64,000 nucleotides of DNA, taken from Guillardia theta CCMP2712 (taxonomy: Eukaryota > Protista > Cryptophyta). Below, piece by piece: positions 3,215-64,000 of this stretch. The stretch is from contig NW_005434591.1 of assembly GCF_000315625.1 (NCBI RefSeq), positions 315,086-379,085 of the forward strand, in the 5' to 3' direction. The translations under genes were made by a program, and so were the position numbers. A model generated the notes under the pieces. The model searched no databases and was not told the origin of the DNA. It saw only the letters and a list, made by a program, of their open reading frames with translations. Positions within the stretch are counted from its first letter, which is position 1; each line of letters opens with the position of its first letter.

Positions 3215-5702
3215 TCTGGCAGGGAGTGACGTGGGGGGCAGGTGCCATCGGACGCGCCGGACGACTACCAGGCGCTGATGGACCTCAAGAACAAGCCGGC
3301 GCTGAGGGAGAAGTACGGGGTCAAGGACGAGTGGGTCCTGCCCTTCGACCTCATCCCCATCATCGAGATCCCCTACAAGCGCGACGACGCGCCGGAGGGA
3401 GCCGAGCCCGAGCTGACGGACCTGGCGGCTAAGGTGGCGTGCGAGGAGTACAAGGTGGCTTCACAGAATGACAAGGAGAAGCTGGTGCTTGCCAAGGCGA
3501 AGACGTACAAGCTCGGGTTCTACGAGGGGAAGATGACCATCGGAGACTTCAAGGGGATGCCCGTGCAAGAGGCGAAGAACAGGGTGAAGGCTCAGATGCT
3601 CGAGGAGAACAACGCGTACTCGTACGCTGAGCCGGAGAAGGAGGTGATGTCTCGGTCCGGCAACGAGTGTGTGGTGGCCCTGACGGATCAGTGGTACATC
3701 AAGTACGGAGAGGAGGAGTGGAGGAAGCAGGTGGAAGAGCATCTGCAGAAGGACCTCAACTGCTACTCAGACGACACCAAGTCCAAGTTCGAGGCAGCTC
3801 TGAGCTGGCTGGGGGAGTGGGGCTGCTCCAGGTCGTTCGGTCTGGGGACGCTGCTGCCATGGGACAAGCAGTTTGTGATCGAGTCTCTCTCTGACTCCAC
3901 CATCTACATGGCCTACTACACCTTCTGCCACATCCTCCACCAGGGCCCCTTCGACGGCTCCGTGCCCGGGCCCGCTGGCGTCGTCGCCAAGGATCTCACA
4001 GAGGAGGTCTGGGACTATATCCTGCTGGACGGGCCCCAGCCCAAGGACAGCAAGGTGCCGCAGGAGACGCTGGAGAGGATGAAGCAGGAGTTCAACTACT
4101 GGTACCCCGTCGACCTGCGCGTGTCCGGTAAGGATCTGATTCAGAACCACCTTACCTTCTTCCTCTACAACCATGCCGCCATCTTCCCCAAGAAGCACTG
4201 GCCCCGTTCCATCCGCACCAACGGCCACGTCCTGCTCAACAACGAGAAGATGTCAAAGTCGACCGGCAACTTCAAGACCCTCAAGCAGGCGATCGGCGAG
4301 TACTCGGCTGACGGCATGCGATTCGCGCTGGCGCTGGCGGGCGATGGCAACGAGGACGCAAACTTCGAGCATGACGTGGCGAACGCGGCGATCCTGAAAC
4401 TGACCAACGAGCTTCAGTTCGTGGAGAAGTCGCTGACTGAGCTGGACAAGATGAGGACGGGAGAGCTCGACCTCTTCATCGACAAGAATTTTGACAACGA
4501 GATCAATCGTCTTGTCAAGTCGGCGGACGAGTGCTACCGCCGCATGCAGTTCCGCGAGTCGGTCATCGAAGGCTGGGACAAGCTCCAGAACGCGCGGGAC
4601 AAGTACCGCGCCATGGCCGGGCCCATCGGCATGCACGCGGAGCTGATCAAGAAGTTCATCACGTGCCAGACGCTCGTGATCGCTCCCATCTGCCCTCACT
4701 ACTCCGAGTACGTGTGGGGGCTGCTGGGGCACAAGGAAAGCGTCATGGAGGCTCGCTGGCCGGAGGTGGGAGACGTCGACCCGCTGCTGGTGCGCATGAA
4801 CAGCTACTTTGACAAGACGCTGTCGGACATCCGAGCCAAGACCGACAAGGCGCGAGCCAAGAAGGCCGTGGCCAAGGCGACCGTCTACGTGGCCGACGAG
4901 TTCCTGGACTGGCAGCAGGCGGCGCTGAATGTGCTGAGGTCGGTGGTGGACAAGGGGGAGAGCTTCGGGAAGGACTTCAAGAAGAACATGATGAGCTTTC
5001 CCGAGCTCGCTCCCTTCAAGGCTCAGACTAAGGTCCTCATGCCCTTCGCCGCCTTCTCCATCGACGAGTTCGAGGCCCGTGGACCCGAGGCCTTCGAACT
5101 CAAGGTGAGGGGCGAGGAGGGAGCGGGGGAGGAAGGGCGAGGTAGTAGGGAGGGAGGGAGGGAGGGAGGGCGGAGGGCGGATGAGAGAAGACGGGTTTGC
5201 TGAGATACATGGCAGGTTCCTTACGATGAAGTTCGTCTCCTCACCGACAGCATCGAGTATCTCAAGGTTGCTTTCCTTCCACCTGCTCTCTCTCCTCCTC
5301 CCCTCCTCCATTTCCTTCTCCCTTCCCCGCCTTCTCCTCCTCTCCCCTCCCGTCCCCTTCCCTCTGCCTGACCCCAATTGCTCAGGGAGAGCTCAGCGTG
5401 GAGGAGATCGAGGTGACCAAGTGGCCTCCTTCAGACCCTGCCGTCCTCAAGAACCTGAGGTATGAATGTGCTCTCATCTCCTCTCGCTCCTCCTCTCCTC
5501 TCGCTCCTCCTCTCCTCCCGCTCCTCTCCTCCCGCTCCTTTCTGTAACCACTTGTTCTGCTCTCTCTCTCTCCCTGGTTGTACCCTGTTGTTCTCTCTTC
5601 TGCCTCCTTCCTGGTCTCGCTCTCGCGCTCTCCGTTTCCTCCTCACTTCATCGCAGCAACAATCCTGCTACTCCCGGCAAACCAGCAGTCAGCTTCTCAT
5701 GA
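164..5702 (+). CDS. LARS: Cytosolic leucyl-tRNA synthetase, multi-exon, 5' end upstream of the window
   Basis: Exons encode [74 protein letters not shown] and KMSKSTGNF (class I KMSKS). The long exon is about 3242-5105. The last exon ends [12 protein letters not shown] at 5702. Confidence 0.97.
2320..2419. other. Assembly gap (100 N) inside a CT-rich LeuRS region
   Basis: Run of N. Confidence 1.
3139..3213 (+). repeat. (CAG)25 microsatellite in a LeuRS intron
   Basis: Direct reading. It lies between the exon ending GVVTS and the exon starting VPSDAPDD. Confidence 0.95.
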
Positions 5703-50512: not shown

Positions 50513-51667
50513 ATGGCCAAGAGAGCTCGAGAGCTGGTCGAGGAAGAGACGAATGCAGCTGTAGAAGAAGAGGCTAGGGGGGTGCAAACAAACGTCAACA
50601 AAGTAGATCAAGCCATCACTGATGTAGAGCAAGAGATCAAGGGAGTACAGGACGAGATCAAGGGAGTACAGGACGAGATCAAGGGAGTACAGGACGAGAT
50701 CAAGGGAGTACAGGACGAGATCAAGGGAGTAGTGGACGAGATCAAGGGAGTAGATCAAGTCATGGCGGATGTAGAGCAAGAGATTAGCCAGGCACAAGAC
50801 CCCAATATGAAGGCTGACTTGATCATGAAACGAACGAAGCTTGAAGGTGAAAAGAATCGGCTTGCGGTCCGAGAGACACGTCTTCGAGATGACAAGAGAC
50901 AGCTTCGGAATGACAAGAGACAGCTTCGAGATAAAGAGGCAGGACTTCGAGATAAAGAGGCACGGCTTCGAGAGGAAACGAAGGAAAAGAAGCAGGCAGC
51001 CTTTACCTGGACAGAGTCAGAAGCTCGGCTTGACGGCATGGGCTTTTGCAAGGAGGACAAATACTTCCGTCTAGCTTGCTCTTACTTAAAGGGCACAAAT
51101 GTAAACAGCGGAGAGCATCTTCTTCTTGTGATGATCATTATCCTGGGTGTGGTTCATGTGTACATGCACATGACGTCCAGTCCGGTGAAGAGTATCACGC
51201 CGTTGCAAGACAACATCTGTCCCTTGCAGACGCGATACAATGATACTCTGTTGAGGCATTTTCCAGTGCCACCCAACATTACGGAGCCAGTCCAGCAGGA
51301 GCAAAAGCCGAGCCCCCAGAAGAACGATACCGTGCGGCCAACCCAGGATCAGAAGCAGCCAATCCAGGAGGAACAGAAGCCGCAGGCCCCCCCAAAGGAA
51401 GGGAATCAGTCTGAGACACGCCAGGAGGAGCAGAAGACTTCAACTGCAGATCACGAGAATGTGAACCAGAAAGAACAGAAATGGACTGTCTTCAGTTCGT
51501 TGCATCTTCCCCGCATCGACCTTGTTCGCCTGTCGGTCCCTGTCGGGACGCTTGCCATCGCAATCGCTTCTCGCGTCACCTACAACTCGATCATGCAGCG
51601 CCGTGCGTACTACAAGAAGCTGAATGATGATTTAGATGCGATCATCAACAGAAAGCCGTTGTGGTAA
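50513..51667 (+). CDS. Intronless, apparently chimeric ORF: heptad coiled-coil N-terminus fused to a TM / Q-E-P-rich / TM segment
   Basis: 21-bp repeat encoding IKGVQDE about x5 (50638-50750), LRDxxxxLR repeats, an abrupt change at about 51128 to MIIILGVVHVY, and AATAAA at 51688. Confidence 0.6.
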   Translation: MAKRARELVEEETNAAVEEEARGVQTNVNKVDQAITDVEQEIKGVQDEIKGVQDEIKGVQDEIKGVQDEIKGVVDEIKGVDQVMADVEQEISQAQDPNMKADLIMKRTKLEGEKNRLAVRETRLRDDKRQLRNDKRQLRDKEAGLRDKEARLREETKEKKQAAFTWTESEARLDGMGFCKEDKYFRLACSYLKGTNVNSGEHLLLVMIIILGVVHVYMHMTSSPVKSITPLQDNICPLQTRYNDTLLRHFPVPPNITEPVQQEQKPSPQKNDTVRPTQDQKQPIQEEQKPQAPPKEGNQSETRQEEQKTSTADHENVNQKEQKWTVFSSLHLPRIDLVRLSVPVGTLAIAIASRVTYNSIMQRRAYYKKLNDDLDAIINRKPLW

Positions 51668-51768
51668 ACCCGTTTTGCTAGTGTTGCAATAAAGTACGTT
51701 CAATATCTACTCCCGGTGAGCGCGATGTATAAAGGGGTGGTTGGCTGGGCGGTGGGGTGTGGTGGGAT

Positions 51769-53449
51769 ATGGGGGGTGGGGCACGGTGGGCGCTTGCCGG
51801 CTCCTGCCTCCTGGCGTGGCTCGGGGGCGTGTCGGGGCAGGGCTTCATGCCGGTCCACGGGAGCATCAACGTGATGCCCACGGCTGCGCTGCACTCGGCA
51901 TCGAGCGTGTCGTACGACTACGCCGCGCGGGTGTGGTCGATCCAGCTGACCTTCGACGCCGGGGTGGCAGGGGTGCCGTACGCGCCCTTCCTGCTCGACC
52001 AGCGGCGGGACACGGGGCCGAGCCTCAACTTCCTCTCGGAGGTGGCGCCGTGGTGCGGGCTGGTGCGCTCCTACTGCTGCTTCGAGGACCTCCTCAACGG
52101 CACGCTCTACTTCAACGACGCGCTGGCCTCCGCCGTCTCCGGGCTGGGCGCGTGCGCCTCGGCGCCGGGGGCGTGGGCCGCGGCGCTGGCCGACCCCTCG
52201 GCGTACGGCGGGGTCCGGCCCGCGGGCAACGTCACGTTCGACTTCGCGGGCAACACGCTGCGCATCCCGCACGAGCAGGCGCAGCTGTACGGGCGCGAGT
52301 ACCTGGACCAGAACAACAACTACGTCGTGGACCTCCGCTTCCTCGCGGTGTTCCAGTCGGCGGCGGCGGGGGTGCTGGAGCTCGCATGGGTGCCGTACCA
52401 GGCCGTGCTGCTCCGCGACATCGACGGGCTCTTCGGGCGCTCGTACGAGGACGTGCGGCAGTGCGTGGCGGCGCCCTACCCGAGCCCGGCCGACTCCTTC
52501 TGGCTGGCGCGCTACGCCTCCCCCGCCTCGGCGGACAAGGTGTGCGAGTGGTACTGCAACCTGGGGCGCTACAGCTTCCCGCTCCACGCGGCGCAGGCGG
52601 AGAGGCTGGCCGCCCGCGCGGGGCATCGCCGTGGGGTACAGCCTGTGGCTGCTGATGAACACGACGGAGCTGTCGCGGGCGCTGGGAGCGGACGTCGTGC
52701 CGCGCAACCTGACGATGGAGTCGGCGCCGACGGTGCCGGCCTGGCTGGACTCGGTGGCGGCCAACATGAGCGCGGGCATCGCGGAGCAGGTGGCGAGCAT
52801 CGCGGGGAGGGCGGTCGGGGTGCGGGCGCTGGCGGAGCTGCACAACACCCAGTACGCGCGGGAGTGGCGGGTCTACATGCACACGCTGAGGGCCGTGTAC
52901 GAGCGGCTGAACCCCGGCAGCGCCGTGGCGGGGCTCGAGACCGTGTTCCTGCGGGAGAGCGCCTCGCAGCCGTACGCGTTCCCGCCCTGGCTGCAGCAGA
53001 TGGGGGTGTTCGACCGGGAGGGCACGGTCGCGGTGGCGGACTACCCGGTCGCGAGGCGGTCGGGCCCGCGCGTGGGCCTGCAGCGGCGCGGCGGGCGGAG
53101 GCAGGCGCTGCCCGCGGCCCCCATCGACGCGGTGGCGATGGAGATGGTCGTCTTCCTCGACACGCAGGGGCTGACGGTGGGGGAGGTGGTCAACTCGATC
53201 TTCCAGGCGGGGGTGGCGATGGTGAACTCCACCTCGCTCCGGGGGCTGTGGGGGATGGACATCTTCGTGCGGGAGCTGACCGTGCGGGTGGAGCCCGTGG
53301 GGAGCCGGTTCCAGGGCGGCTTCCTGGTCTCCTTCCTCCTGCTCGGGGCCGCGGGGGCCGCGCTGGCGTGCCTGGGGTGCTACGCCCTGTCCGTCCCGCC
53401 CTACGAGCGCCTGCGCAGGGCTCCGGGCTCGTATGCAGACGCGGGTTGA
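51769..53449 (+). pseudogene. GC-rich intronless type I membrane glycoprotein gene with one frameshift at about 52600-52630
   Basis: TATAAA at 51728. Signal peptide MGGGARWALAGSCLLAWLGGVSG and a CEWYCNLG motif. Sensible protein continues in frame 52631-53449 and ends in TM GFLVSFLLLGAAGAALACLGCYAL. Confidence 0.65.
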
Positions 53450-53509
53450 AATTCCGAGCGTATTTAGGGCGGGAGGCCGCGCCGCACCCCATGGTTGCTG
53501 GCGGCCGGT

Positions 53510-53914
53510 ATGTCGTACAGGCAGTCCTCGAAGCAGGTGGAGCGCCACAAGCACGTGGGCGAGCTGGACAACCTTCATCGCTTTGAGAGCGAGGCCATCG
53601 TGACGACCGTCAACGAGATCGCCGAGGGGGGGCTGAGGCCGCGGACGCAGCTGCTGGACGCCGCGGACTGCCACACGCTGGTGCGGGCCACGCTGACGCT
53701 GGGCGGGGTGGGCGGCGGCGGGGAGGATGGGGCGGGGACCGTGCTGGCCTCGGCGATGATGAAGGTGCCCGTGGGCGTGCCGAGCGGGGCGGACGCGGCG
53801 ACCTCCGCGGCGCTGCTGTCGAAGATGCTCGGCCCCAACAGCGGCCTCTTCGCGGGGCACGAAGACGCGCGGACGGCGATGCTCCGGCACCTCCGCGGCC
53901 TGTTTAGGGTTTAG
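53510..53914 (+). pseudogene. GC-rich intronless ORF truncated by telomere addition
   Basis: MSYRQSSKQVERHKH... reads directly into CTG-TTTAGGG, and the stop is supplied by the telomeric repeat. TATTTA at 53461. Confidence 0.6.
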
Positions 53915-53958
53915 GGTTTAGGGTTTAGGGTTTAGGGTTTAGGGTTTAGGGTTTAGGG
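53903..53958 (+). repeat. Interstitial telomeric tract (TTTAGGG)8
   Basis: Direct reading. Confidence 0.98.
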
Positions 53959-55105
53959 GGCCCCTGACAGAGGCAGGGGCCCCTGACAGAGGCATGCTGC
54001 TCTGCGGCGCGTAGGGAGAGCGCAAGAGGACCGGAGGAAGCTGCGAGCAAGAGGTTTGTATAGTTCAAACAGCTTTCTAAGCATGGTACTACAGTATGAT
54101 GAGAGCGTTCGCAACCTGCTGTATCGGAGATCATGCCAATACACGCAGGGCGAGCGCTCTGGAGGCCACGTCGAAGAGGCCGCCGACCTCGTCGAGAGGG
54201 TGAAGAACTTCGCGAAGCGGTATCCTGGTAGTAGGACAGCTCATGCTTGCAGAGCTGAGGGGGGATGCACCCCCGACGCTATCGCTGAAGCCATCCGCTC
54301 AACATGTCGGCAGGCGAGACGCGACCTGTTTGAAGACTCTCTGAGGGAATGGAGCTCAGAGTCGAGAGCATGGTTTATACAACAGATGGAGGAGGCCAAG
54401 AAGCAGAATGTCGAGACATACATCGGCACAGAAGGCACCGAGGGGACCTCCTTCATCTCCATGACTCTCCTGGGCATCTCCTCGATGTATGTTCGACAAG
54501 AAGACAAGTTGAAATCGAAGCTTATGGAGCTAGGTCTCATGGTAGACTCAGTCGATGGCACCTTACAGACCTGAGATAGCACGAGCAGACGACATCTCAG
54601 TCACCGTCTCCTTCCTTCGGAATGAAGCAGCCATGGAGCTATGGGAAGGCAGGAGAGAATACTGCATAGACGGCAGATCGTTCAGAGCCACAGAGGTGAG
54701 CATTGCACATGACCGGTCCTTCAAGCTTCGAGCCAAGCGAGGACCTTGGGGCAAGGGAGGGAGCCTTGCCGAGCTATCACAGCTCTTAGCTCTTGGAGGA
54801 ATGTCGACGGCCGACATAGCTCAGATCTATCGATTTCAGCTGCTCTCGCAATCTCTTGCAGCCGCAGAGGTACAACCACTTGCGGGCATGCTCGTGCAGG
54901 GTCCTGGGGGCAAGTACTGGCACTCTCCAGCAAAAAGAGCTGGAGTGGGTGCTCAGCTCGCCTTCGACGGCAAGTTGCGAGCAGACCTTGGCCTCGTTCA
55001 GAGAGAGCGAGGCGATGGAGGGGGTACATCTCACTCTCATCAGCGACGACGCCAAGCTCAGAGAGACGTTTGCAGTCGAGCTCACAGCCGACACCTTCGT
55101 TCCTA
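53959..55105 (+). mobile_element. Telomere-associated element copy 1 (degenerate, 3'-truncated by piggyBac)
   Basis: About 2 copies of the 19-bp unit AGGGGCCCCTGACAGAGGC, a uORF at 53994 and ORF1 from 54083, clearly homologous to 60699-62846. Two deletion frameshifts at about 54553 and 54915. Homology ends at TADTFV. Confidence 0.85.
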
Positions 55106-55580
55106 GTGGCTAAGTGACACAAAGGTTTTTCGGGTTTTTGCCGTTTTCTCACGGGCAAACCTTTAGAGGGCATTAAAAGGTGGGGTGGGGGTGTATGTGT
55201 ACGGGTATATTTGTATTACAAATGTACCGGTTCCAAGCTCATTCGGGGGGGTAGGGGTACTCGTCTGCCGAAAAAATGGCGCGCGGGCATCCTCCAGGAG
55301 GTGGGTGCATAGCGTACTTGCCCGCCTTTGCCAGGATCCATTTGTCTTCACATGCACAGGACGTGATCATATTAGTGTAAATATGATTCAAAAAATCCAT
55401 TTTCTTATCCTTTCCATCAGTTTTTGTCCAATGAACACGGTTTGTGAAATCGCCAACTCGTCTTCGATGCAACTGAAATGAACATTCTTGCACAGACAAG
55501 CAGGTAACAACAGTCGAATATCGTTTAATGATATCAAAACTTATTTGATCATGCTTAAGATCTGTTAATTTGTTCTTCAA

Positions 55581-55764
55581 TTACGCAAAATTTTCCTTAC
55601 AGCAATGTCGTGAAAAACAGTTCCTTTGCGTTCCAGGACCACACAATCCAAAAGGGCGCTTCAATGGATCGTTTTTGCTGCACTGGTAACAGCAAAAGGA
55701 AGTCTTGCAACCATGTTTGTCCCTGCCACAGCATACCTTACACCTTACACGAGTTACTTTCGCT
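55581..55764 (-). pseudogene. Detached piggyBac C-terminal cysteine-rich domain
   Basis: Manual translation, absent from the ORF track: AKVTRVRCKVCCGRDKHGCKTSFCCYQCSKNDPLKRPFGLCGPGTQRNCFSRHCCKENFA-TAA, matching the RCxxC..KT..CxxC..LC..CF..H pattern. Confidence 0.85.
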
Positions 55765-58551
55765 CATAGCGTTGTCGCTCTCAACTGACCCCTCTGGTTT
55801 CCAATAGTTTTCTGTGGGGGTATCCTTCCACATATGTGAATAGCAAATGGCAGTTGGGGTCTGGGGTGGGTCAGACGGCTGGGAGCTGATTCAAATTGGT
55901 TGGGACCAGTTTAAGGGGGTAGGGTACTTCCTGGTAGCAAATAATTGTACCAACAGTACCATTTTTATGGTACACATAGAGTACTGTTAGGAAAACTTGT
56001 ACCAAAATAGTTTATGCGGTACCTCCCCTGTTCAAACTATGATGCTTTGGACCCACCTGTTTCCCAGTGAAAGTCCCTTCTCCGATGGGGTCAAGTTTTG
56101 GACCCTACCCTGCCTCCGACCAACATAGACCACCCTTGTAGATCAGAGGGAGCTCTCAAGCCTTGCCCCTTCCCTTCCCTGGTTGCATATCCAAGGTTAG
56201 CAAGTGAATGTTACGCAGACGTGACTCGTCTGCAGCAGGAGAGCTCAGACGAGGACAAGCAGAGGCAATCCTTGCAGAATCTGGTGTGAGCGCAGCAGTC
56301 TGAATACATCTCTGTGATTGCAAACACATGTAAAGAGGGTTGATCATCATAGATTTTAGCAGCTTGAATAAGGAGTACTCTGCACGGACCGTCCGCTAGT
56401 GGCGCTGTACGATGGATGACATTGACTCTCATGAGCAATAAGTAGGAAGTCATGAAGCATGTCACGGAGACAGCATGATCTATACTTATTTCATAGGAAT
56501 CTGCTGCAAAGAGTCGGGCTTGAGGGCGTTCTGAGCAATATGCAAGAGTATTGCCAAGGCATGTAAAGAGTTTCAAGGAATACCAGTGCATTCATCAAAT
56601 AGCAGTGATGAGGTACCACATGAAGGCATGACTTGCAAATTGATTGCATGTCGTGTTCCATTTGATGACTTACAATCAAGACGCTTTTGAGCGACAAAAC
56701 GATACCCCTTATAGCATTGTAAATCATATTTCATTTCCTTCACCTCGAGTCGAAGCAAGAAATTTTCAAGGTGCTGATATCTTTGTTTTGACTAGACTGA
56801 CATGGTATCAGGAGCAGTTAATTTATGATAGATCCGATTGAATCATGCAGACGAAAATGGACATACCCTTTTGAATAAATCTTTCTCCTCGAGTCTCATA
56901 CCTGAGCTTTCTTGCCTCTTCTTTGTAACCTAACATGTACAAAGCATTGGCATTTTCTTACACAAAGTAAACTGAGCCTGACCAGCTTCTCTTATTCGCT
57001 GCATTCTCGCCCTTCCATCATCCTGATCTTTTCCTCGCTTGACACCCTTGGGCCAATGCGAGTTGCATGCTGCGATATCATCAATTGCTTGGAACCAAGC
57101 GATAAGTGGAACAAAGCGCTCAGGTGCTATGCAGGCTGCAATGCATCGCCGGCATTCCAACCATATGGATAAGTTTGCCAACTTTGCGCTGCTCATATTA
57201 CTTGCAGCGAAAGTCAACCATTCCAGATGATAAGGACAATGTATGAGACTTGCGCAGAAGAATGTGCAAACACTTCCACACGACGGTGAGTGTGCACGAT
57301 TCCACATACACAAGAATGCTGCGCAGAAGTATCTACCAATTTCTTGTCTAACCACTCTTTTGATGAATTAGCATCGACTTCTCTAACATGTACATCAGGT
57401 CATGCAGGCTCATGGAGAAATGATGATGTTGTTAGCAACAACTTGGCTTTGTTTTATTGAAGTACGTTAAAAACATCACCTAGGCCGCTACATATTCCCA
57501 TGTCCGCTTTGCAACAGTTCTGAACCACGTATCACCATAAAGTTGTACATCAATCGACTAGTCCGATAACATCTTCATGTAGAGCCTCAGTTTCAAGCAC
57601 AACGCGGTTTGGAGCGATACTGTGACTTGTTTGCCTGGTATGATTACATGTGACATGCTCCCTTAGACAATTGAAGAGTATTGTAGAAAATTCAGTCAAG
57701 CGGTGCACAGTTCAGCCTTTCTTTCTTACTATTCATCAAACATAGTGTATCAGACAGATGTCATTGTGTGGATCGACGCAAAATAAAGATGAACTCGAAG
57801 TTCTGTCTGAAAAATGACCCTTTGCAAGTACTGATGGATCGAGAGCAAGTTCTTGATGCTGTATCATTGAGAAGTAAAATAACAGTCATTTGCCAGTGCT
57901 ACACGACTCGTATCCATCAGCTTGAAATATGCACACCTGAGTTTCATTCCATGAATCATCTTTCCTCCCGCATTCAAACTGAGAAACTCAGTGCTTGTCA
58001 ACTCATGGGCATGGTTTCAGAGTTTGAATTTCCAGCAAGTTGAGGAAGGACAAGGCAGACAGAAGCGTCAAAGAAAGTTGAGGGTCATCAGGGAAGGTCT
58101 GACGAGAGTCTGAGCCTCATGAACAGGGAAGGATAGGGATGCGCAAGTGTGGAGGGCAGGGAGATGGGGAGGGAGACACCCTCTGCTAAATGTATTTTAA
58201 AAGGTACCCATTACAGTACCAGACCAAGACCTGTACCCCCCACCCCCCTGTCGCGTCCGTTGGGTTCGAATATTTGAAATACTACCACGCCTACCCATCA
58301 GTTTCTGGTACAAATCATTACTCCACTATACAAGCGCTATGTGACCCTATCCAAAGACAAATAGGAACGATTGTTTACTTATCTAAGCTCTCAATTACCC
58401 CCGATTGCCGTTGAACTTGCAGCGCTGGAAATGGATTTTCAAACCTTCCAATCCTTGGATTTTTTACTCACACACAATTTTGTACTGGGAAACGCCTGGA
58501 TCTGGTACAAATCCCAATTGTCAGCAAGTTCCTTGACCCGACAACGCTATG
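55765..58551. mobile_element. Unclassified 2787-bp insertion with 13-bp terminal inverted repeats
   Basis: CATAGCGTTGTCG at 55765-55777 and its reverse complement at 58539-58551, at the points where the transposase is split. No TSD seen. The interior is AT-richer with decayed minus-strand coding remnants. Confidence 0.7.
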
Positions 58552-58584
58552 GACGTCCTTGGAACGGCCCGTGTCGTCTTGTGC

Positions 58585-59730
58585 TCAGCCAAAAAATTGT
58601 TCACGGAAACAAGAAAATGTAGCATGCCTCTTTCTTTTCCGCGAAGGTCTCCCGCCTTCAAAGCTATTTGTCATCATCTGAACGGAAAGATCAGCAATGA
58701 ACGAAGAGTGATCAATATCTTCATCTGTTTCCTTGTACAAGCAGTAAACCTTGTAAGCGTCCACCTCAATCATGCCCATGATAGATGTCATCATTCTGAA
58801 AATCCAATTCTGTGTACGAACGCAGTCTTCGAGACCTAAACTGGATTGTCTCAGTTGATTGTGACGATCGATAACTCCTGCTGATGTGAAATATGACTTC
58901 ACCATAGCTGTTCTGGGAACCGTGAAGGTCCAAGGAACCCGCTCCTGAGTCTCTGGTACCGTCCTCATTCGACGCTTCACATGTGGATCTGTAGAGGTCG
59001 TGGTATTCCACGTGGAAATCAAGATCTTCTTCGGCAATCCACGGCGTCCAGGTTCATTCCAGGCATGAGCATACACGTATAAATCCTGTCCATTAACTTC
59101 GCGTACCAGCCTTGCAGTCTTCGTGGCTCCTCTGGGGGGGTGTGGCTCCCATGCTGCACCATTCAGGTAAGCTTTCGGGAACCCAGAATACGCTGTTTTG
59201 ACTAAACCCGTAAAAAAAGTGTTCCGTTCCAGAAGCGCGACGGCTGTTGAAAGTGAAGCAAACGCTGAGTCTCCGTATAGAATATGACCCTTCCCGAGGT
59301 AATTTTGCATGATGCGAAGAACCAGAGCTGTGTGCTTTGGATATTGAGAGTTGTATTGCCTGGTACCCATCTCCTCTTTGCCTTCTTGCAACTCCAGATG
59401 GAGCATGATCCCAAAAGTGCATTCAGCCAGATTCTTGTACTCGCTTCCCTTCCACCCTGTCACACGTCAAGATTCAAGCAATGAAACAACCAAATCTAAT
59501 CAGTACCTGCCGGCATGGATTCCATTTTCCCATTGATTCATCAATTGTCAATTCGCTTCCAGCTCGAACAGTTCGAAGCCTATTGCGATTGAACGCTTCG
59601 ATAAGAGGACGAATCTTGTCAAACCGTTGCCTAGACCCGTCGGCTTGAGGTGGCCACAGTTTCAAGTGTTTTTTCCACAGTTCAAACCGCCTACGCGATA
59701 CTCCAAAGCGGTTGCCGATGTCAAGTGGGG
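58585..59730 (-). pseudogene. piggyBac (DDE_Tnp_1_7-type) transposase core
   Basis: FGVSRRRFELW, FDKIRPLIEAFN, catalytic TIDESM, YGDSAFAS and VIDRHNQLRQ, plus W..R......IEVDAY. Short intron at about 59457-59506; the reading frame is broken there. Confidence 0.9.
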
Positions 59731-59731
59731 G

Positions 59732-59846
59732 AGGGTTTAGGGTTTAGGGTTTAGGGTTTAGGGTTTAGGGTTTAGGGTTTAGGGTTTAGGGTTTAGGGTT
59801 TAGGGTTTAGGGTTTAGGGTTTAGGGTTTAGGGTTTAGGGTTTAGG
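59732..59846 (+). repeat. Interstitial telomeric tract AGGG(TTTAGGG)15TTTAGG
   Basis: Direct reading. Confidence 0.98.
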
Positions 59847-60606
59847 AGGCGCCGTTATTTTCGGCAGGCGCCGTTATTTTCGGCAGGCGCCGTTATTTTC
59901 GGCAGGCGCCGTTATTTTCGGCAGGCGCCGTTATTTTCGGCAGGCGCCGTTATTTTCGGCAGGCGCCGTTATTTTCGGCAGGCGCCGTTATTTTCGGCAG
60001 GCGCCGTTATTTTCGGCAGGCGCCGTTATTTTCGGCAGGCGCCGTTATTTTCGGCAGGCGCCGTTATTTTCGGCAGGCGCCGTTATTTTCGGCAGGCGCC
60101 GTTATTTTCGGCAGGCGCCGTTATTTTCGGCAGGCGCCGTTATTTTCGGCAGGCGCCGTTATTTTCGGCAGGCGCCGTTATTTTCGGCAGGCGCCGTTAT
60201 TTTCGGCAGGCGCCGTTATTTTCGGCAGGCGCCGTTATTTTCGGCAGGCGCCGTTATTTTCGGCAGGCGCCGTTATTTTCGGCAGGCGCCGTTATTTTCG
60301 GCAGGCGCCGTTATTTTCGGCAGGCGCCGTTATTTTCGGCAGGCGCCGTTATTTTCGGCAGGCGCCGTTATTTTCGGCAGGCGCCGTTATTTTCGGCAGG
60401 CGCCGTTATTTTCGGCAGGCGCCGTTATTTTCGGCAGGCGCCGTTATTTTCGGCAGGCGCCGTTATTTTCGGCAGGCGCCGTTATTTTCGGCAGGCGCCG
60501 TTATTTTCGGCAGGCGCCGTTATTTTCGGCAGGCGCCGTTATTTTCGGCAGGCGCCGTTATTTTCGGCAGGCGCCGTTATTTTCGGCAGGCGCCGTTATT
60601 TTCGGC
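59847..60606 (+). repeat. Perfect tandem array: 40 x 19 bp AGGCGCCGTTATTTTCGGC
   Basis: 760 bp = 40 x 19, no variant unit seen, internal GCCG/CGGC stem. Confidence 0.97.
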
Positions 60607-60698
60607 AGCATGGCTCCTCGTCAGGTGTAGGGGAAGCCGCCAGGGCGCCAAGGAAGCTGCAAGCGAGAGGTTTGTATACTTCAAATAGCTTTCTAAGT

Positions 60699-62846
60699 AT
60701 GGTTCTTCAGTATGATGAAAATGTTCGCAACCTGCTGTATCGGAGATCATGCCAATACACGCAGAGCGGACTTGTGGATGCCTCTGTCCTCGAAGCTGAT
60801 CTCGTCGAGAGGGTGAAGAGCTTCGCGAAGCGTTATCCGAACAGCAGGACAGCCCAGGCTTGCAAGGCTGTGGAGGGATGCACCCCCGACGCTATCGCAG
60901 AAGCCATCCGCTCGACATGTCAGCAGGCACGACGTGAGTTTCTGCAAGAAGCGATGACTGGATGGAGTGACGCATCCAGAGAGTGGTTTATGCAGCAGAT
61001 TGAAGAAGCCAAGAAGGAGAAGGTTGAGACATACACCGCCTCAGCAGGCAACGAGGTGACTTCCTTCATCTCCATGACTCTCCTGGGCATCTCCTCGGTG
61101 TATGTCAACCATGAAGAAAAGCTGAAGAAGAAATTTGAAGAGATCGGACTGATCGTAGACTCAGTGCAAGAGAGTAAAGCAATCATGTGGAAGGCTCCGT
61201 ATAGACCCGAGATAGCGAGTGCTGAGGAGATCCCGGTGACTGTTTCCTTCCTCCGCAATGCACAAGCGGAGAAGCTCTGGCAGGGAAGAGAGGACTTCGC
61301 GATCGATGGTCGCAAGTTCACAGCTGTACATGTGAGCATCGTGCACGATCGATCTTTCAAGATTCGAGCCAAGAGAGGACCCTGGGGCAAAGGGGGCAGC
61401 TTGGCAGAGCTGACTCACCTGCTAACCTTGGGCGGCATGACAACGGCTGAGATAGCTGCCGTCTATCGCTATCAGCTGCTGCGCCAGTCCCTTGCAGCGG
61501 TCCAACTCCAGCCGCTGGCAGGCATGCTGGTCGCTGGGGCGCCAGGACAGCAAGTCCACAAAGGCTTAGGTCAGAAAGGCTTCATCGCTGTAGGGGCCAA
61601 CGTCATCTGGAGACAGAGGGAGGTGGAGTGGATCGTCTCCTCGAGCTGCCCAGAGGCGAATGATACAGCATTTCGAGCTTTCCGAGAGAGCGAAGCGATG
61701 GAGGGAGTACACCTGACTCTGTTCAGCGAGGACCCGAAGATCAGAGAGGCGCTCGCAGTCGAGTTGACAGCTGATCGCTTTGTGTCCAGAAATAAGTTGA
61801 AGAAGGCATCAAGGATGCAGAAGAAGGCAGGCGGCAAGGACGGCAAGGAGATCAAGATCATCATCAAGTCGACGGCAGCATCTGGTCGCTTCACGAGGAA
61901 GGAGATGGAGGGGCTGTGCAACGGCGGCAACACGTCTATCGCAAGAGTCAAGAGAGTCTTGTTGGAGATCGCTAACAGGCTCGAGATCAACGTTGAAGGC
62001 ATCGACATGGAGGAGGATTTGAACACCAAGTCCTGGAACGGGTCCAAGCTATGCATCCTCCTCGGCTCCACGGAGGATGCTCGACGCATGATGAAGGAGC
62101 TGCCCTTCTATCTCGAAGGCGCAGCAACCAAGCTCGAAGCAGTCGGCTTCGACAAGGAGCCTGACTCTGAGGCGGCTGGTCAGCGGGGCACCAGCGACGC
62201 AGCGCAGCGACAGGAGGAGAGCGAGGGAGAGTGGCTGGAGTTTACAGACCTGGAGAGGATCACAATGGAGGCAGCATCTCCGTCAAGCCAAGAGGACATG
62301 CAGCTCGTCAGCGAGCTGTCAGCAGTCATCGAAGATGCAGCTTCTTTGAACGAGGCGGGGACGAGCGAGCCGATCAAGCTGGTCCTGGACAAGGCCGTTG
62401 GCAACCTCCACGACACCTTCTACTCTCCGGGGAGCCTGGAGTTCATGTCGCTGGGAGAGTGGGCGAAGATGCCAGAGGAGCAGGGAGTTGGGCGCAACGT
62501 TCTCAAGGAGAAGCTGGGGAAGTGGCTGCAGAGCAAGCGCTGGACTCGCGTGCAAGGAGAGAGCAAGAAGGCAAGGAGGGGCAGCGCGTTCTCGCCACGG
62601 GCAACGGCAGCTGCTGAGCTTGAGCAGGAGGCGGAGAGCGACGACATAGAGCGTCGATCTCTTAGCTTCCTGTTCATAGCACTGAGTAAATTCGCAGAGA
62701 TGCATGTGCTGGCCTGCTCGCTGAAGGTGGACAAGAAGGACCGACTGCGGGTGGAGATGAGGGAAGATGACGAAGAAGAGGAAGACATGGAGGAAGAGCA
62801 AGGCGAGGGCGAGGAAGAAGACGGGGCGAGCCCGTACCGAGCTTGA
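60699..62846 (+). CDS. 715-aa ORF1/Gag-like protein with RRM-like segments and an acidic C-terminal tail
   Basis: Intact, intronless ORF. RRM-like pattern ISMTLLGI..EEKLKKKFEEIG..VTVSF..AQAEKLW..FAIDGRKFTAV and a second-like KLCILLGSTEDARRMMKELPF. No YxDD RT motif or endonuclease motif recognised. The fold call is inference. Confidence 0.8.
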   Translation: MVLQYDENVRNLLYRRSCQYTQSGLVDASVLEADLVERVKSFAKRYPNSRTAQACKAVEGCTPDAIAEAIRSTCQQARREFLQEAMTGWSDASREWFMQQIEEAKKEKVETYTASAGNEVTSFISMTLLGISSVYVNHEEKLKKKFEEIGLIVDSVQESKAIMWKAPYRPEIASAEEIPVTVSFLRNAQAEKLWQGREDFAIDGRKFTAVHVSIVHDRSFKIRAKRGPWGKGGSLAELTHLLTLGGMTTAEIAAVYRYQLLRQSLAAVQLQPLAGMLVAGAPGQQVHKGLGQKGFIAVGANVIWRQREVEWIVSSSCPEANDTAFRAFRESEAMEGVHLTLFSEDPKIREALAVELTADRFVSRNKLKKASRMQKKAGGKDGKEIKIIIKSTAASGRFTRKEMEGLCNGGNTSIARVKRVLLEIANRLEINVEGIDMEEDLNTKSWNGSKLCILLGSTEDARRMMKELPFYLEGAATKLEAVGFDKEPDSEAAGQRGTSDAAQRQEESEGEWLEFTDLERITMEAASPSSQEDMQLVSELSAVIEDAASLNEAGTSEPIKLVLDKAVGNLHDTFYSPGSLEFMSLGEWAKMPEEQGVGRNVLKEKLGKWLQSKRWTRVQGESKKARRGSAFSPRATAAAELEQEAESDDIERRSLSFLFIALSKFAEMHVLACSLKVDKKDRLRVEMREDDEEEEDMEEEQGEGEEEDGASPYRA

Positions 62847-62876
62847 GCTGAGCTCAAGGTAAGTAGAGAAGGTGGA

Positions 62877-63081
62877 GGCGACCGAAGGCCAAGGTGAGGA
62901 GAGGCAACTCTCCTGACTGAGGCTGAGGAAGCTGAATGGAGGAGGAGTAGGTGGCGACCGAAGGCCAAGGTGAGGAGAGGCAACTCTTCTGACTGAGGCT
63001 GAGGAAGCTGAATGGAGGTAGAGTAGGTGGTGACCGGCCAAGGTGAGGAGAGGCAACTCTTTTGACTGAGGCTGAGGAAGC
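62877..63081 (+). repeat. 76-bp tandem repeat (about 2.7 copies) in the 3' UTR with a GCAA-tetraloop hairpin
   Basis: Units start at 62877, 62953 and 63029. Stem is AGGAGAG-GCAA-CTCTYYT. Confidence 0.9.
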
Positions 63082-63157
63082 CAAGAGAAGACAGCAAAAG
63101 TAGAAAGTAGAAAATTGCAAACGCCCACAACGAGGCCGAGCAACATTCTAGCATTCT

Positions 63158-63188
63158 AATAAACTCACATAATAATAATAATAATAAT
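63158..63188 (+). terminator. AATAAA signal and (AAT)n tail of element copy 2
   Basis: AATAAACTCAC-AT(AAT)6 joined to AGGG(TTTAGGG)4. Confidence 0.75.
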
Positions 63189-63220
63189 AGGGTTTAGGGT
63201 TTAGGGTTTAGGGTTTAGGG
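63189..63220 (+). repeat. Interstitial telomeric tract AGGG(TTTAGGG)4
   Basis: Direct reading. Confidence 0.98.
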
Positions 63221-64000
63221 CTGGAGTAACAGACATGCTCTCCTCCCCTGCAGTTTGAGGGGATCCCTGCGAGCTAGGGTGCTGAACAGGATATTTTTCT
63301 GTGCAGAAACGGTTGTTTGATCATGTGGTATCTATCCAAAGAGGAAAGGAAACAGATTGCTCGTGTCCGAGTTTCCCAGTTCCTAAACAAGGACACGACA
63401 CCTTCAGCACCTTCGCTAGGAGAGCTGATCCGAAGATTGGAACACTTCGTCAGGCAGTACCCTCAGAGCAGGACAGGCAGAGCCTTGCAGTCCAAGGAAG
63501 TCTCGATGAACGCCTTAGCCGAAGCCATTCGACAGACCTGCAAACATGCTGAAGTCAGGAGCCAGGAGGATGCCATCAAAGAATGGGGGGAAGAAGGACA
63601 GTCGTGGTATGTCTCTGCATGGAACGCAGACAAACAGGAGGTACTAGACAAGAGTGCCTGCATCGATGCTTCAGGAGCGTCCCCCGAGAGTGGTAAACTG
63701 ATTACCATGGCTATCCTCGGAGTTCCTACCCAGTACATAAAACAAGTTGAGGTACTGTGTGAGAAGTTGAAGGATCAAGGACTCTTGGTGCACGAGGAGC
63801 AGGGCAAGAAATGCATCTCGTGGAGAGCCCCGATCAAGAAAGATTTGATTCCGACAGTGGATGAAATCCCAGTCGTGGCAACACTCCAATTGAACGACGC
63901 AGCAGAACTGCTGTGGAAAGGACAGACGAACTTCAGGATCGACGGAAAGATGATCCGCGCGGTGAACGCGCATTCGAAGCATCCTTGCTCCTCAAGATAA
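63221..64000 (+). mobile_element. Telomere-associated element copy 3 (divergent subfamily), continues beyond the window
   Basis: ORF from ATG 63323 aligns in register with copy 2 (YPxSRT, AxAEAIRxTC, IxMxxLG, WxAP, EIPV, LWxG..FxIDG). Its TAA at 63998-64000 looks like the result of a 1-bp deletion in a TCCTTCAAGATA (SFKI)-like site. Confidence 0.85.

What the first reader, a model, noticed from the sequence alone, without database searches (positions are those of the whole stretch)
53903..64000. Family of RT-less, ORF1-only elements embedded head-to-tail in TTTAGGG telomeric repeats
Seen: three homologous but diverged units start immediately after a TTTAGGG tract (53959, 59847, 63221), all sense towards the chromosome end. 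The complete unit has one 715-aa ORF, a structured 3' UTR, AATAAA and an (AAT)n tail fused to AGGG(TTTAGGG)n, with no RT or endonuclease. Known: telomere-specific non-LTR elements exist (Bombyx SART/TRAS, Magnaporthe MoTeR, Giardia Gil, and Drosophila HeT-A, which encodes only Gag). A tail joined to AGG on the G-strand is the SART-type polarity, opposite to HeT-A and Athena. Inference: this is a non-autonomous, telomere-targeted retroelement family that keeps its own RNA-binding ORF1 and borrows an RT in trans. The strong divergence of copy 3 implies several long-lived subfamilies. I do not recognise it as a described family.
Basis: partly seen in the sequence, partly recalled or inferred. Interest (0 to 1): 0.92.

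Follow-up and report, generated by a model that had tools for sequence, protein, structure and literature searches.

The report
Telomere-targeting LINEs with ORF1-only partner
The chromosome end in this window of the alga Guillardia theta is built from jumping genes that insert only into the telomere repeat. The commonest of them encodes just an RNA-binding-like protein and probably borrows the copying enzyme of larger relatives, one of which starts at the window's edge.

Summary
Three TTTAGGG tracts lie on the + strand, and each is followed at once by an element whose sense strand points to the contig end.

The genome is Guillardia theta CCMP2712. It holds at least 62 intact, 99-100% identical copies of the 715-aa ORF, almost all at contig ends. 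Their 3' ends join the telomere repeat in one register, through an (ATA)n tail of variable length. Some 5' ends are truncated.

- Copy 2 is a true RT-less, ORF1-only element.
- Copy 3 is the 5' end of an autonomous LINE. Elsewhere the same ORF1 is followed by a ~2500-aa ORF2 with a C48-like protease, an APE endonuclease, RT and a C-terminal CCHC/PD..E module, the cryptophyte 'Dualen' layout.
- Copy 1 is a decayed, 3'-truncated copy of a second ORF1-only family.

Autonomous and ORF1-only families share the last ~20 nt and the tail types. ORF1 models as tandem RRM-like domains and is under purifying selection (dN/dS about 0.15).

Orthologous elements in two outside contigs show the same telomere junctions. 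A TERT candidate is present.

I found no paper describing this. Two other first-stage notes on this genome flagged the same system.

The parts
51757..53902 (+). GC-rich (72%) open frame of unknown nature, cut off by telomere tract 1. This is the proximal boundary of the terminal array.
   Evidence: ORF list, composition, no Pfam hit, junction read.
53903..53958 (+). Telomere tract 1: 8 TTTAGGG units, G-strand on +.
53959..55125 (+). Copy 1, a decayed and 3'-truncated member of a second ORF1-only family (P0015 type). It has two 19-bp monomers, a leader, and ORF1 codons 1-372 in three frames.
   Evidence: tblastn of P0015: 94%, 87% and 91% identity in frames 2, 3 and 1. Monomers.
55126..59731 (-). 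Non-element, AT-rich DNA. It holds a piggyBac-like transposase remnant (58585-59463 and on to the junction) truncated by telomere tract 2, which I read as a healed break.
   Evidence: Pfam DDE_Tnp_1_7, E 5.9e-16, covering profile positions 155-343 only. Sequence read.
59732..59846 (+). Telomere tract 2: 16.4 units.
59847..60608 (+). 5' array of copy 2: 40 perfect copies of a 19-bp monomer. I infer a promoter or 5'-end module.
   Evidence: TRF score 1524. The same and at least 8 other monomer types follow telomere tracts in other loci.
60609..60698 (+). Unique 5' leader of copy 2.
   Evidence: Conserved in other copies.
60699..62846 (+). ORF1 of the RT-less element: 715 aa, modelled as tandem RRM-like domains.
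   Evidence: Translation. At least 62 intact copies. Fold matches. dN/dS 0.15.
62847..63168 (+). 3' UTR with 2.7 copies of a 76-bp repeat (62877-63081) and the terminal box shared by all families (63149-63163, including AATAAA at 63158-63163). This copy carries a private 75-nt deletion.
63169..63189 (+). (ATA)7 tail.
   Evidence: Tail length differs between copies.
63190..63220 (+).
63221..64000 (+). Copy 3, the 5' end of an autonomous Dualen-like LINE. It has a partial 20-bp monomer, a leader, and the first 225 codons of ORF1 from 63323. The contig end cuts it.
   Evidence: Identical ORF1 followed by a ~2500-aa ORF2 with APE and RT on C15, C64, C160, C82, C58, C231, C176 and C63.

Best explanation
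This chromosome end of Guillardia theta carries a head-to-tail array of telomere-specific non-LTR retrotransposons, separated by short tracts of telomerase repeats.

Two kinds of element coexist:
- Autonomous elements of about 10.2 kb. They run: 19-20-bp monomer array, ORF1 (~700 aa), ORF2 (~2500 aa), 3' UTR, triplet-repeat tail. ORF2 holds a C48-like protease, an APE endonuclease, RT and a C-terminal CCHC plus restriction-like motif.
- RT-less elements of 2.6-3.3 kb. They keep only the monomers, a diverged ORF1, a 3' UTR and the same 3' terminus.

Shown here:
- The anatomy of both kinds.
- One fixed orientation and one fixed register of insertion.
- Independent insertion events, seen as variable tails and 5' truncations.
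- Recent activity (99-100% identical copies).
- Purifying selection on ORF1.
- The same junctions in orthologous elements outside this genome.

Inferred mechanism:
1. The ORF2 protein nicks the C-strand of double-stranded telomere repeats at or next to TTT^AGGG.
2. It primes reverse transcription on the terminal UA-rich triplet tail. Slippage there would give the variable tail length.
3. The top strand is cut a few bases away, leaving the 5' junction TTTAG(G)|AGG.
4. The RT-less elements are copied in trans because they carry the same 3'-terminal box and tail. Their own multi-RRM ORF1 protein packages their RNA in cis.
For: Copy number and position. Searches found at least 62 full-length copies without stops, out of 666 first-look candidates. 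31 of 32 minus-strand copies lie within 25 kb of a contig start. Plus-strand copies lie at contig ends wherever the contig length is known.

3' junctions. Of 48 distinct 3' ends, about 46 are joined to the repeat as ..TA|GGG, with 1-10 tail triplets.

5' junctions. Of 83 tract ends, nearly all are followed by monomer arrays. Some copies are 5'-truncated inside a monomer or inside the ORF (L053).

Autonomous partners. ORF1 is followed by ORF2 on C15 and C64. ORF2 matches RVT_1 at 3e-35 and Exo_endo_phos at 5e-8. Peptidase_C48 scores above its cut-off in the ortholog P0096. A CCHC plus PD..E..K..KY block is invariant across four subfamilies. The RT matches R2 and L1 ORF2p in the PDB.

Shared 3' terminus. 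The terminal box and the tail types are shared between autonomous and RT-less families.

ORF1.
- It is homologous over its full length across all families and in a Hanusia phi transcript.
- The profile finds only 55 proteins among 1.84 billion.
- The model has mean pLDDT 69.6.
- Its best matches are multi-RRM proteins: Prp24 at E 5e-5, RRMs at Z 7-8.7 over residues 380-485, and all ten nearest Atlas clusters.

Selection. dN/dS is 0.15 for the RT-less ORF and 0.14-0.17 for the autonomous ORF1. Among young copies, 175 codon differences are synonymous and 72 non-synonymous.

Outside this genome. JGI contigs L067 and L068 (ORF1 84% identical to G. theta family 3) carry the same monomers, tail and telomere junctions. 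L068 also carries the 3' end of an RT-less element upstream.

Telomerase. A TERT candidate is present.
Against: - No transposition event, RNA end or nicking activity was observed.
- Target-site duplications cannot be read in a 7-bp repeat, so the two nick sites are inferred and ambiguous by 1-3 nt.
- The donor-recipient relation rests on shared 3' ends only.
- The ORF1 of the RT-less families is just 30-32% identical to that of either autonomous family.
- The restriction-like endonuclease is a motif-level call: its profile found nothing in the PDB. Pfam found no RNase H.
- The proposed 3' stem shows no covariation. It is missing from the window's own copy and from a mini-element in L009.
- The assembly is a draft, and some internal arrays (C72, C46, C8) may be misjoins or may be real.
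Confidence: 0.85

Rival explanations
1. Terminal addition followed by telomerase re-capping. The element is not inserted into double-stranded repeats. Instead the G-overhang (ending ..TTTAGG) primes second-strand synthesis on a free cDNA, adding the element at the very end. Telomerase then extends the ..TA tail with GGGTTTAGGG.
For: - A fixed register at both junctions could reflect telomerase template alignment and a preferred overhang end.
- Telomerase healing clearly occurs at this locus, at 53902 and 59731.
- A TERT candidate is present.
Against: - The autonomous elements encode one certain and one probable endonuclease, which end addition would not need.
- Tracts of only 2-4 units lie between elements. 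That fits cuts inside a tract better than elements being added onto telomeres 14-28 bp long.
- SART1, with the same polarity, inserts into the repeats rather than at the end (PMC7265360).
Confidence: 0.08
2. Y'-like subtelomeric repeats. The units are host or selfish subtelomeric genes that spread between chromosome ends by recombination or break-induced replication, carrying interstitial telomere tracts with them.
For: - Head-to-tail units separated by short telomere tracts resemble yeast Y' arrays.
- Near-identity of copies could also come from gene conversion.
Against: - Tail length, tract length, monomer number and neighbouring family differ from copy to copy.
- 5'-truncated and internally deleted copies each have their own telomere junction.
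- ORF1 is homologous to that of RT-bearing LINEs with the same 3' end.
Confidence: 0.04
3. The RT-less units are dead deletion derivatives with no requirement for their protein. Their ORF is intact only because the copies are young.
For: The copies are 99.1-99.8% identical, so intactness alone proves little.
Against: - dN/dS is 0.15 against a 92%-identical relative (L069), the same as for ORF1 of autonomous elements.
- Synonymous differences exceed non-synonymous ones, 175 to 72, among young copies.
- Two RT-less families about 60% identical both keep ~715-aa ORFs.
- The ORF is only 30-32% identical to the autonomous ORF1s, so the lineage is old.
Confidence: 0.03

Closest known systems
SART1 / TRAS1 of Bombyx mori (R1 clade, telomere-specific LINEs; PMC7265360)
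   Same: - Insertion into double-stranded telomerase-type repeats at one register.
- Sense strand on the G-strand, as in SART1 (site TT^AGG, against TTT^AGGG or TTTA^GGG here).
- Head-to-tail arrays, with telomerase still encoded.
- A stop/start overlap TAATG between ORF1 and ORF2 in family 3, which I recall from memory for SART1.
   Different: - ORF2 is about 2500 aa, with a C48-like protease and a C-terminal CCHC/restriction-like module.
- ORF1 has no CCHC knuckles and models as tandem RRMs.
- The tail is a triplet repeat, not poly(A).
- The 5' end is an array of 19-20-bp monomers.
- An abundant ORF1-only partner exists.
- The host is a cryptophyte.
HeT-A / TART / TAHRE of Drosophila (PMC2173066, PMC5537684)
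   Same: - A two-component telomeric system: the most abundant element encodes only the Gag/ORF1 protein and depends on the RT of telomeric relatives.
- Subfamilies turn over quickly.
   Different: - Polarity is opposite: Drosophila elements attach by their oligo(A) tail to the chromosome end.
- Drosophila has no telomerase repeats.
- They belong to the Jockey clade, and their Gag has zinc knuckles.
- Here the elements are embedded in TTTAGGG tracts and a TERT candidate is present.
Cryptophyte Dualen LINEs (Dualen-1_GCr, Dualen-5_CCu, and a 2543-aa Tara ORF; Lescot et al., PMC5029228)
   Same: - Domain order: C48 peptidase, APE, RT, CCHC, restriction-like endonuclease.
- ORF2 length of about 2500-2575 aa.
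- Cryptophyte hosts.
   Different: - That paper reports a SET domain and RNase H, which were not detected here.
- It mentions no ORF1, no telomere targeting and no non-autonomous partner.
- Membership by RT phylogeny could not be tested here.
HAL1 (half-L1) of mammals. Recalled from memory, not checked here.
   Same: A non-autonomous LINE derivative that retains only ORF1.
   Different: It derives from L1, has an ORF1 of the Transposase_22 type, is dispersed through the genome and is not telomeric.
Zepp (Chlorella), Tx1-1_ACar (anole), GilM/GilT (Giardia), MoTeR/FoTeR (fungi); listed in PMC10088271 and PMC12857005
   Same: Retroelements tied to telomere repeats in organisms that have telomerase.
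   Different: They belong to different clades and have different endonucleases (or none). None is reported with an ORF1-only partner or from Cryptista.

Membership tests
Non-LTR (LINE-type) retrotransposon, non-autonomous member | Defined 3' end with a simple-repeat or A-rich tail whose length differs between copies. | tested here: met
   Tails of 1-10 ATA (or CTA) units after an invariant terminal box, in 48 distinct ends.
Non-LTR (LINE-type) retrotransposon, non-autonomous member | Variable 5' truncation. | tested here: met
   5' ends fall inside monomers, at the leader (L004) and inside the ORF (L053), each directly after a telomere tract.
Non-LTR (LINE-type) retrotransposon, non-autonomous member | Related autonomous copies encode RT plus an endonuclease and share the 3' end. 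| tested here: met
   ORF2 has APE and RVT_1. The terminal box and tail types are shared.
Non-LTR (LINE-type) retrotransposon, non-autonomous member | Target-site duplication. | tested here: inconclusive
   The target is a 7-bp repeat. The junctions fit a 3-4-bp duplication but cannot prove one.
Telomere-specific LINE, SART-type | Insertion in telomere repeats at one register and in one orientation. | tested here: met
   About 46 of 48 3' ends are joined as ..TA|GGG. All copies run sense towards the contig end.
Telomere-specific LINE, SART-type | R1-clade architecture: ORF1 with CCHC knuckles and an ORF2 of about 1100 aa with APE and RT. | tested here: not met
   ORF1 has no Pfam hit and no CCHC. 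ORF2 is about 2500 aa with extra domains.
Dualen / RandI group | APE endonuclease N-terminal to the RT. | tested here: met
   Exo_endo_phos at residues 447-630 (33.4 bits, cut-off 24.5); RVT_1 at 1165-1418.
Dualen / RandI group | Restriction-like endonuclease with a CCHC finger C-terminal to the RT. | tested here: inconclusive
   A CCHC, AHN, PD, E and K..KY block is invariant in five sequences from four subfamilies. The profile found no PDB match. The reading of the motif rests on my memory of R2-type alignments.
Dualen / RandI group | RNase H domain. | tested here: not met
   No Pfam hit in ORF2 residues 1437-2236 or in the last 1000 residues. A divergent domain is not excluded.
Dualen / RandI group | C48 (Ulp1-like) peptidase, as in the cryptophyte Dualen of PMC5029228. 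| tested here: met
   26.5 bits (cut-off 20.7) in the ortholog P0096. 17.2 bits, below the cut-off, in the G. theta C15 copy.
Dualen / RandI group | RT groups with Dualen references in a phylogeny. | not testable with these tools
   No Repbase reference sequences were on hand. The nearest named relatives are only Hanusia phi and unnamed JGI proteins.
HeT-A-like element | Encodes Gag/ORF1 only and is telomeric. | tested here: met
   Copy 2 unit, 59847-63189, and at least 21 loci with the same 3.3-kb layout.
HeT-A-like element | Attached by its tail to the chromosome end (sense towards the centromere); Jockey-type Gag. | tested here: not met
   Polarity is opposite and the element is embedded in telomerase repeats. 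There is no Gag-type Pfam hit.

The most novel reading that the evidence does not exclude
The RT-less element may be more than a parasite of the autonomous LINEs. It could be a HeT-A-like working part of the chromosome end in an organism that still has telomerase. In that reading its multi-RRM protein directs element RNPs to telomeres, and the arrays buffer or heal eroded ends. The two endonucleases of the Dualen-type partner would divide the work, one cutting each strand of the telomere repeat.
Probability: 0.15. Interest if true: 0.85.

Novelty: new variant of a known kind. Interest (0 to 1): 0.68.

Why it matters
Telomere-specific LINEs are known from insects, one lizard, Chlorella, Giardia and some fungi. 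An ORF1-only telomeric partner is known essentially only from Drosophila.

Finding both together in a cryptophyte has three consequences:
- It shows that the two-component telomeric system evolved again, in a distant eukaryotic supergroup and alongside telomerase.
- It would be the first target-specific member of the dual-endonuclease LINE group, as far as I could find. That gives a defined 7-bp target on which to test what each endonuclease does.
- The many near-identical intact copies, the short shared 3' terminus and natural mini-elements give a compact system for asking how an RT recognises a non-autonomous RNA.

On the practical side, dozens of 'hypothetical protein' gene models of G. theta are these ORF1s, including the chimeric GUITHDRAFT_115379 in this window.

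Tried and rejected
- Pfam on the 715-aa ORF and on copy 3: no hit.
- ESM Atlas search by sequence features: no usable hit.
- First structure model from 5 sequences: too poor to use (pLDDT 48). The second, from 22 sequences, was usable.
- Word-indexed homolog search with the APE+RT segment: only two hits.
- Profile of the ORF2 C-terminus against the PDB: nothing.
- Pfam search for RNase H: nothing.
- RNAalifold on the 3' ends: an invariant stem without covariation in six sequences, and no structure once family 3 was added, because the alignment broke.
Later I only read them in sequences already fetched.
- The look-up of encoding contigs does not serve this genome.
- Supplements of PMC5029228 are not held.
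- Seven literature searches found no paper on telomeric retroelements in Guillardia or other cryptophytes. Repbase itself could not be searched.
- Considered and rejected: a host subtelomeric gene family, Y'-like recombinational spread, and dead deletion derivatives (see the rival explanations).
Full report
OBSERVATION

The last 10 kb of the window hold three perfect TTTAGGG tracts, at 53903-53958, 59732-59846 and 63190-63220. All have the G-strand on + (24 matches to two units against 0 expected). The window ends at the end of contig C83, so + runs towards a chromosome end.

Each tract is followed directly by an element.

Copy 2 (59847-63189) is complete:
- 40 perfect 19-bp monomers and a 90-nt leader.
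- One ORF of 715 aa (60699-62846).
- A 3' UTR with 2.7 copies of a 76-bp repeat.
- AATAAA at 63158-63163, then (ATA)7 fused to GGG of the next tract.

It has no Pfam domain and encodes no RT or endonuclease.

Three corrections are needed.
- Copy 1 is only the first 372 codons of a related ORF, in three frames, and it is 3'-truncated at about 55125.
- 55126-59731 is foreign AT-rich DNA. It includes a piggyBac-like transposase remnant on the minus strand that is cut off by tract 2.
- Copy 3 is cut by the contig end.

ORGANISM AND COPY NUMBER

All close homologs are 'hypothetical proteins' of Guillardia theta CCMP2712. There is also a 37%-identical transcript of Hanusia phi, and a 100%-identical transcript filed under a dinoflagellate, which I take for carry-over.

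In the 87-Mb assembly at least 62 full-length copies of the ORF are 99-100% identical at the protein level, and 60 of them have no stop (666 first-look candidates). At the DNA level, 29 sampled copies are 99.1-99.8% identical to the window's copy.

31 of 32 minus-strand copies lie within 25 kb of a contig start. Plus-strand copies lie at contig ends wherever the contig length is known. The sense strand therefore points to the end throughout.

JUNCTIONS

Among the 60 loci fetched there are 48 distinct 3' ends carrying the terminal box TAGCATTCTAATAAA. About 46 of them run into the telomere repeat in one register..TA|GGGTTTAGGG, through 1-10 triplets of ATA or CTA.

Of 83 distal tract ends, nearly all are followed by arrays of 19-20-bp monomers of at least nine sequence types. 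The commonest junction is TTTAGG|AGG.. or TTTAG|AGG...

Some copies start inside a monomer, at the leader (L004) or deep inside the ORF (L053). Tract lengths range from 2 to more than 70 units.

Different tails, tracts, monomer numbers and neighbours show that these are separate insertion events, not one duplicated block.

THE RT DONORS

The ORF1 fragment of copy 3 is 100% identical to ORF1s on other contigs. About 5 kb downstream of those lies RVT_1, inside an open frame of about 2500 aa.

One full element was read on C15 (L061/L062) and one on C64. In order it has:
- 20-bp monomers.
- ORF1 (701 aa).
- A stop, then an in-frame ATG 9 nt later.
- ORF2 (2500 aa).
- A 530-nt 3' UTR ending in the same terminal box, followed by (CTA)n and the telomere repeat.

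ORF2 contains the following:
- A weak Ulp1/C48 match. It scores above Pfam's cut-off in the ortholog P0096.
- An APE endonuclease (33 bits) and RT (122 bits).
- A C-terminal block, CCHC ... AHN ... PD ... E ... K..KY, that is invariant in four subfamilies.

From memory, I read that block as an R2-type restriction-like endonuclease. Its profile found nothing in the PDB, so this remains a motif-level call. The RT matches R2 (4.6e-23) and L1 ORF2p (1.2e-19).

A second autonomous family ('family 3', ORF1 43% identical to copy 3) has the same layout, with a TAATG stop/start overlap.

This is the domain order that Lescot et al. report for cryptophyte Dualen LINEs: C48, APE, RT, RNase H, CCHC, RLE, and a 2543-aa Tara ORF (PMC5029228). 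I did not detect RNase H or SET.

Copy 3 is therefore not RT-less. It is the 5' end of a probable RT donor.

WHAT THE FAMILIES SHARE

ORF1 aligns over its full length in all families, at 30-60% identity.

The last ~20 nt and the tail are shared and even shuffled between families:

| Family | 3' terminus |
|---|---|
| Copy-2 type (RT-less) | AATAAACTCAC(ATA)n |
| Family 3 (autonomous) | AATAAACTCAA(ATA)n |
| C15 type (autonomous) and one family-3 variant | AATAAAATCGA(CTA)n |
| Copy-1 type (RT-less) | AATAAACTCAA(CTA)n |

A closing stem, UUAGA(C)...(G)UCUAA, lies just 5' of AAUAAA. It encloses a family-specific hairpin in the minimum-energy fold of 8 of 8 ends from 5 families (z -2.6 to -3.6 in six of them).

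That stem is probably auxiliary at most:
- It never varies, so there is no covariation.
- The window's own copy lacks its 5' half through a private 75-nt deletion.
- A mini-element in L009 keeps only 1.4 monomers plus the last 27 nt and the tail.

The terminal box plus the tail is the better candidate for what the RT recognises.

THE ORF1 PROTEIN

A profile of the family finds only 55 proteins, all members or fragments, among 1.84 billion representatives.

The model built from 22 sequences has mean pLDDT 69.6. Three structure searches agree:
- Foldseek's best PDB hits are multi-RRM proteins: Prp24 at E 5e-5 with probability 1.0, then SFPQ/NONO, raver1 and PUF60.
- Residues 380-485 align to single RRMs at Z 7.2-8.7. 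Other ferredoxin-like folds score alongside them (MzrA 9.9, ACT domains).
- All ten nearest ESM-Atlas clusters by shape are multi-RRM families, at low TM (0.19-0.26).

I conclude that ORF1 is a tandem RRM-like protein and probably binds RNA. It has no CCHC knuckle and no coiled coil of the L1 type.

It is under purifying selection:
- dN/dS is 0.15 between the window's copy and a 92%-identical relative (L069).
- The ORF1 of family 3 gives 0.14-0.17 across G. theta and two outside contigs.
- Among the young copies, synonymous differences outnumber non-synonymous ones, 175 to 72 (shared variants are counted repeatedly).

OUTSIDE THIS GENOME

Two JGI contigs from different samples (L067 and L068) encode ORF1+ORF2 elements whose ORF1 is 84% identical to G. 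theta family 3 and to each other. Both show monomers at the 5' end, and AATAAACTCAA(ATA)n fused to the telomere repeat at the 3' end.

L068 begins with the 3' end of an RT-less element joined through three repeat units to the autonomous one. The two-component, telomere-embedded arrangement is therefore conserved in relatives.

MECHANISM (INFERRED)

The polarity is that of SART1, which inserts at TT^AGG in double-stranded repeats (PMC7265360).

Here the junctions fit two cuts:
- A C-strand nick at TTT^AGGG or TTTA^GGG. The terminal UA of the RNA tail pairs with the primer, and slippage gives the variable tails.
- A top-strand cut after TTTAG(G), which would leave a 3-4-bp duplication.

Which of the two nucleases makes which cut is unknown.

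The monomer arrays may supply a promoter, since every new copy lands behind telomere repeats. This is speculation.

A TERT candidate exists (PF12009, 51 bits), and perfect tracts separate the elements. Telomerase and elements therefore coexist, as in Bombyx and unlike Drosophila.

RIVALS

- End addition followed by telomerase re-capping could also fix both registers. It makes the endonucleases superfluous and fits the 2-4-unit tracts poorly.
- Y'-like recombinational spread is contradicted by the copy-specific tails and truncations.
- 'Dead deletion derivative' is contradicted by the selection on the ORF and the age of the lineage.

LITERATURE AND NOVELTY

A 2023 survey lists SART/TRAS, GilM/GilT, Zepp1, MoTeR1, Tx1-1_ACar, Athena and HeT-A/TART/TAHRE (PMC10088271). 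FoTeRs were added in 2025 (PMC12857005).

Seven searches found nothing on telomeric retroelements in cryptophytes. A 2025 cryptomonad genome paper even tabulates LINE/Dualen as expanded in all cryptophytes except G. theta (PMC12747079). Repbase could not be searched.

Two other first-stage notes on this genome describe the same system on other contigs (s1-433728 and s1-432739), so the scan has found it before.

I class it as a new variant of a known kind.

LIMITS

- 14 small runs guessed to be RNA hold 40-82% of the element's words, but none is on record as RNA.
- The assembly is a draft.

Noticed in passing
window 53510-55110: The annotated gene GUITHDRAFT_115379 (P0038) is a chimera. It joins the GC-rich frame ending at 53902 to the decayed copy 1, with the telomere tract treated as an intron.
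   Followed up: partly
window 58585-59731 (minus strand): A piggyBac-like transposase remnant (DDE_Tnp_1_7, C-terminal part only) runs up to telomere tract 2 and is cut off there. The GC-rich frame at 53902 ends the same way. Both look like chromosome breaks healed by telomerase and then colonised by elements.
   Followed up: partly
window, between about 63115 and 63116: Copy 2 of the window has a private 75-nt deletion in its 3' UTR compared with 31 other sampled copies. The deletion removes the 5' half of the conserved terminal stem.
   Followed up: yes
L009, reverse strand, about 4297-4400 (G000:C321): A mini-element lies between two telomere tracts: 1.4 monomers of family 3 joined directly to the last 27 nt of the RT-less 3' UTR plus its tail. 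It is a natural hint at the minimal cis requirements, or a template-switch product.
   Followed up: no
L054, L067, L068 (ORF1/ORF2 junction); L061:3289-3303: Family 3 has overlapping stop and start codons (TAATG) between ORF1 and ORF2. In the C15 type a single stop and 9 nt separate the two ORFs in the same frame, and one copy on C17 shows a 3139-aa open frame, a possible fusion.
   Followed up: partly
G000:C72, about 435-457 kb; also C46:485 kb, C8:1.17-1.19 Mb, C60: Arrays of these elements lie far from contig ends. On C72, minus-strand copies are followed by plus-strand copies. They may be old end-to-end fusions or scaffold misjoins. They could not be fetched.
   Followed up: no
L014 (G000:C4:1275.9 kb): One copy has its tail replaced, right after AATAAA, by unrelated sequence that ends in a T-run. 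This is possibly another retroelement inserted in reverse.
   Followed up: no
window 50633-50973: Several 21-bp tandem repeats lie just proximal to the GC-rich frame. Their nature is unknown.
   Followed up: no
G000:C21:562211-562372: The single Telomerase_RBD match (51 bits) is the candidate TERT gene.
   Followed up: no
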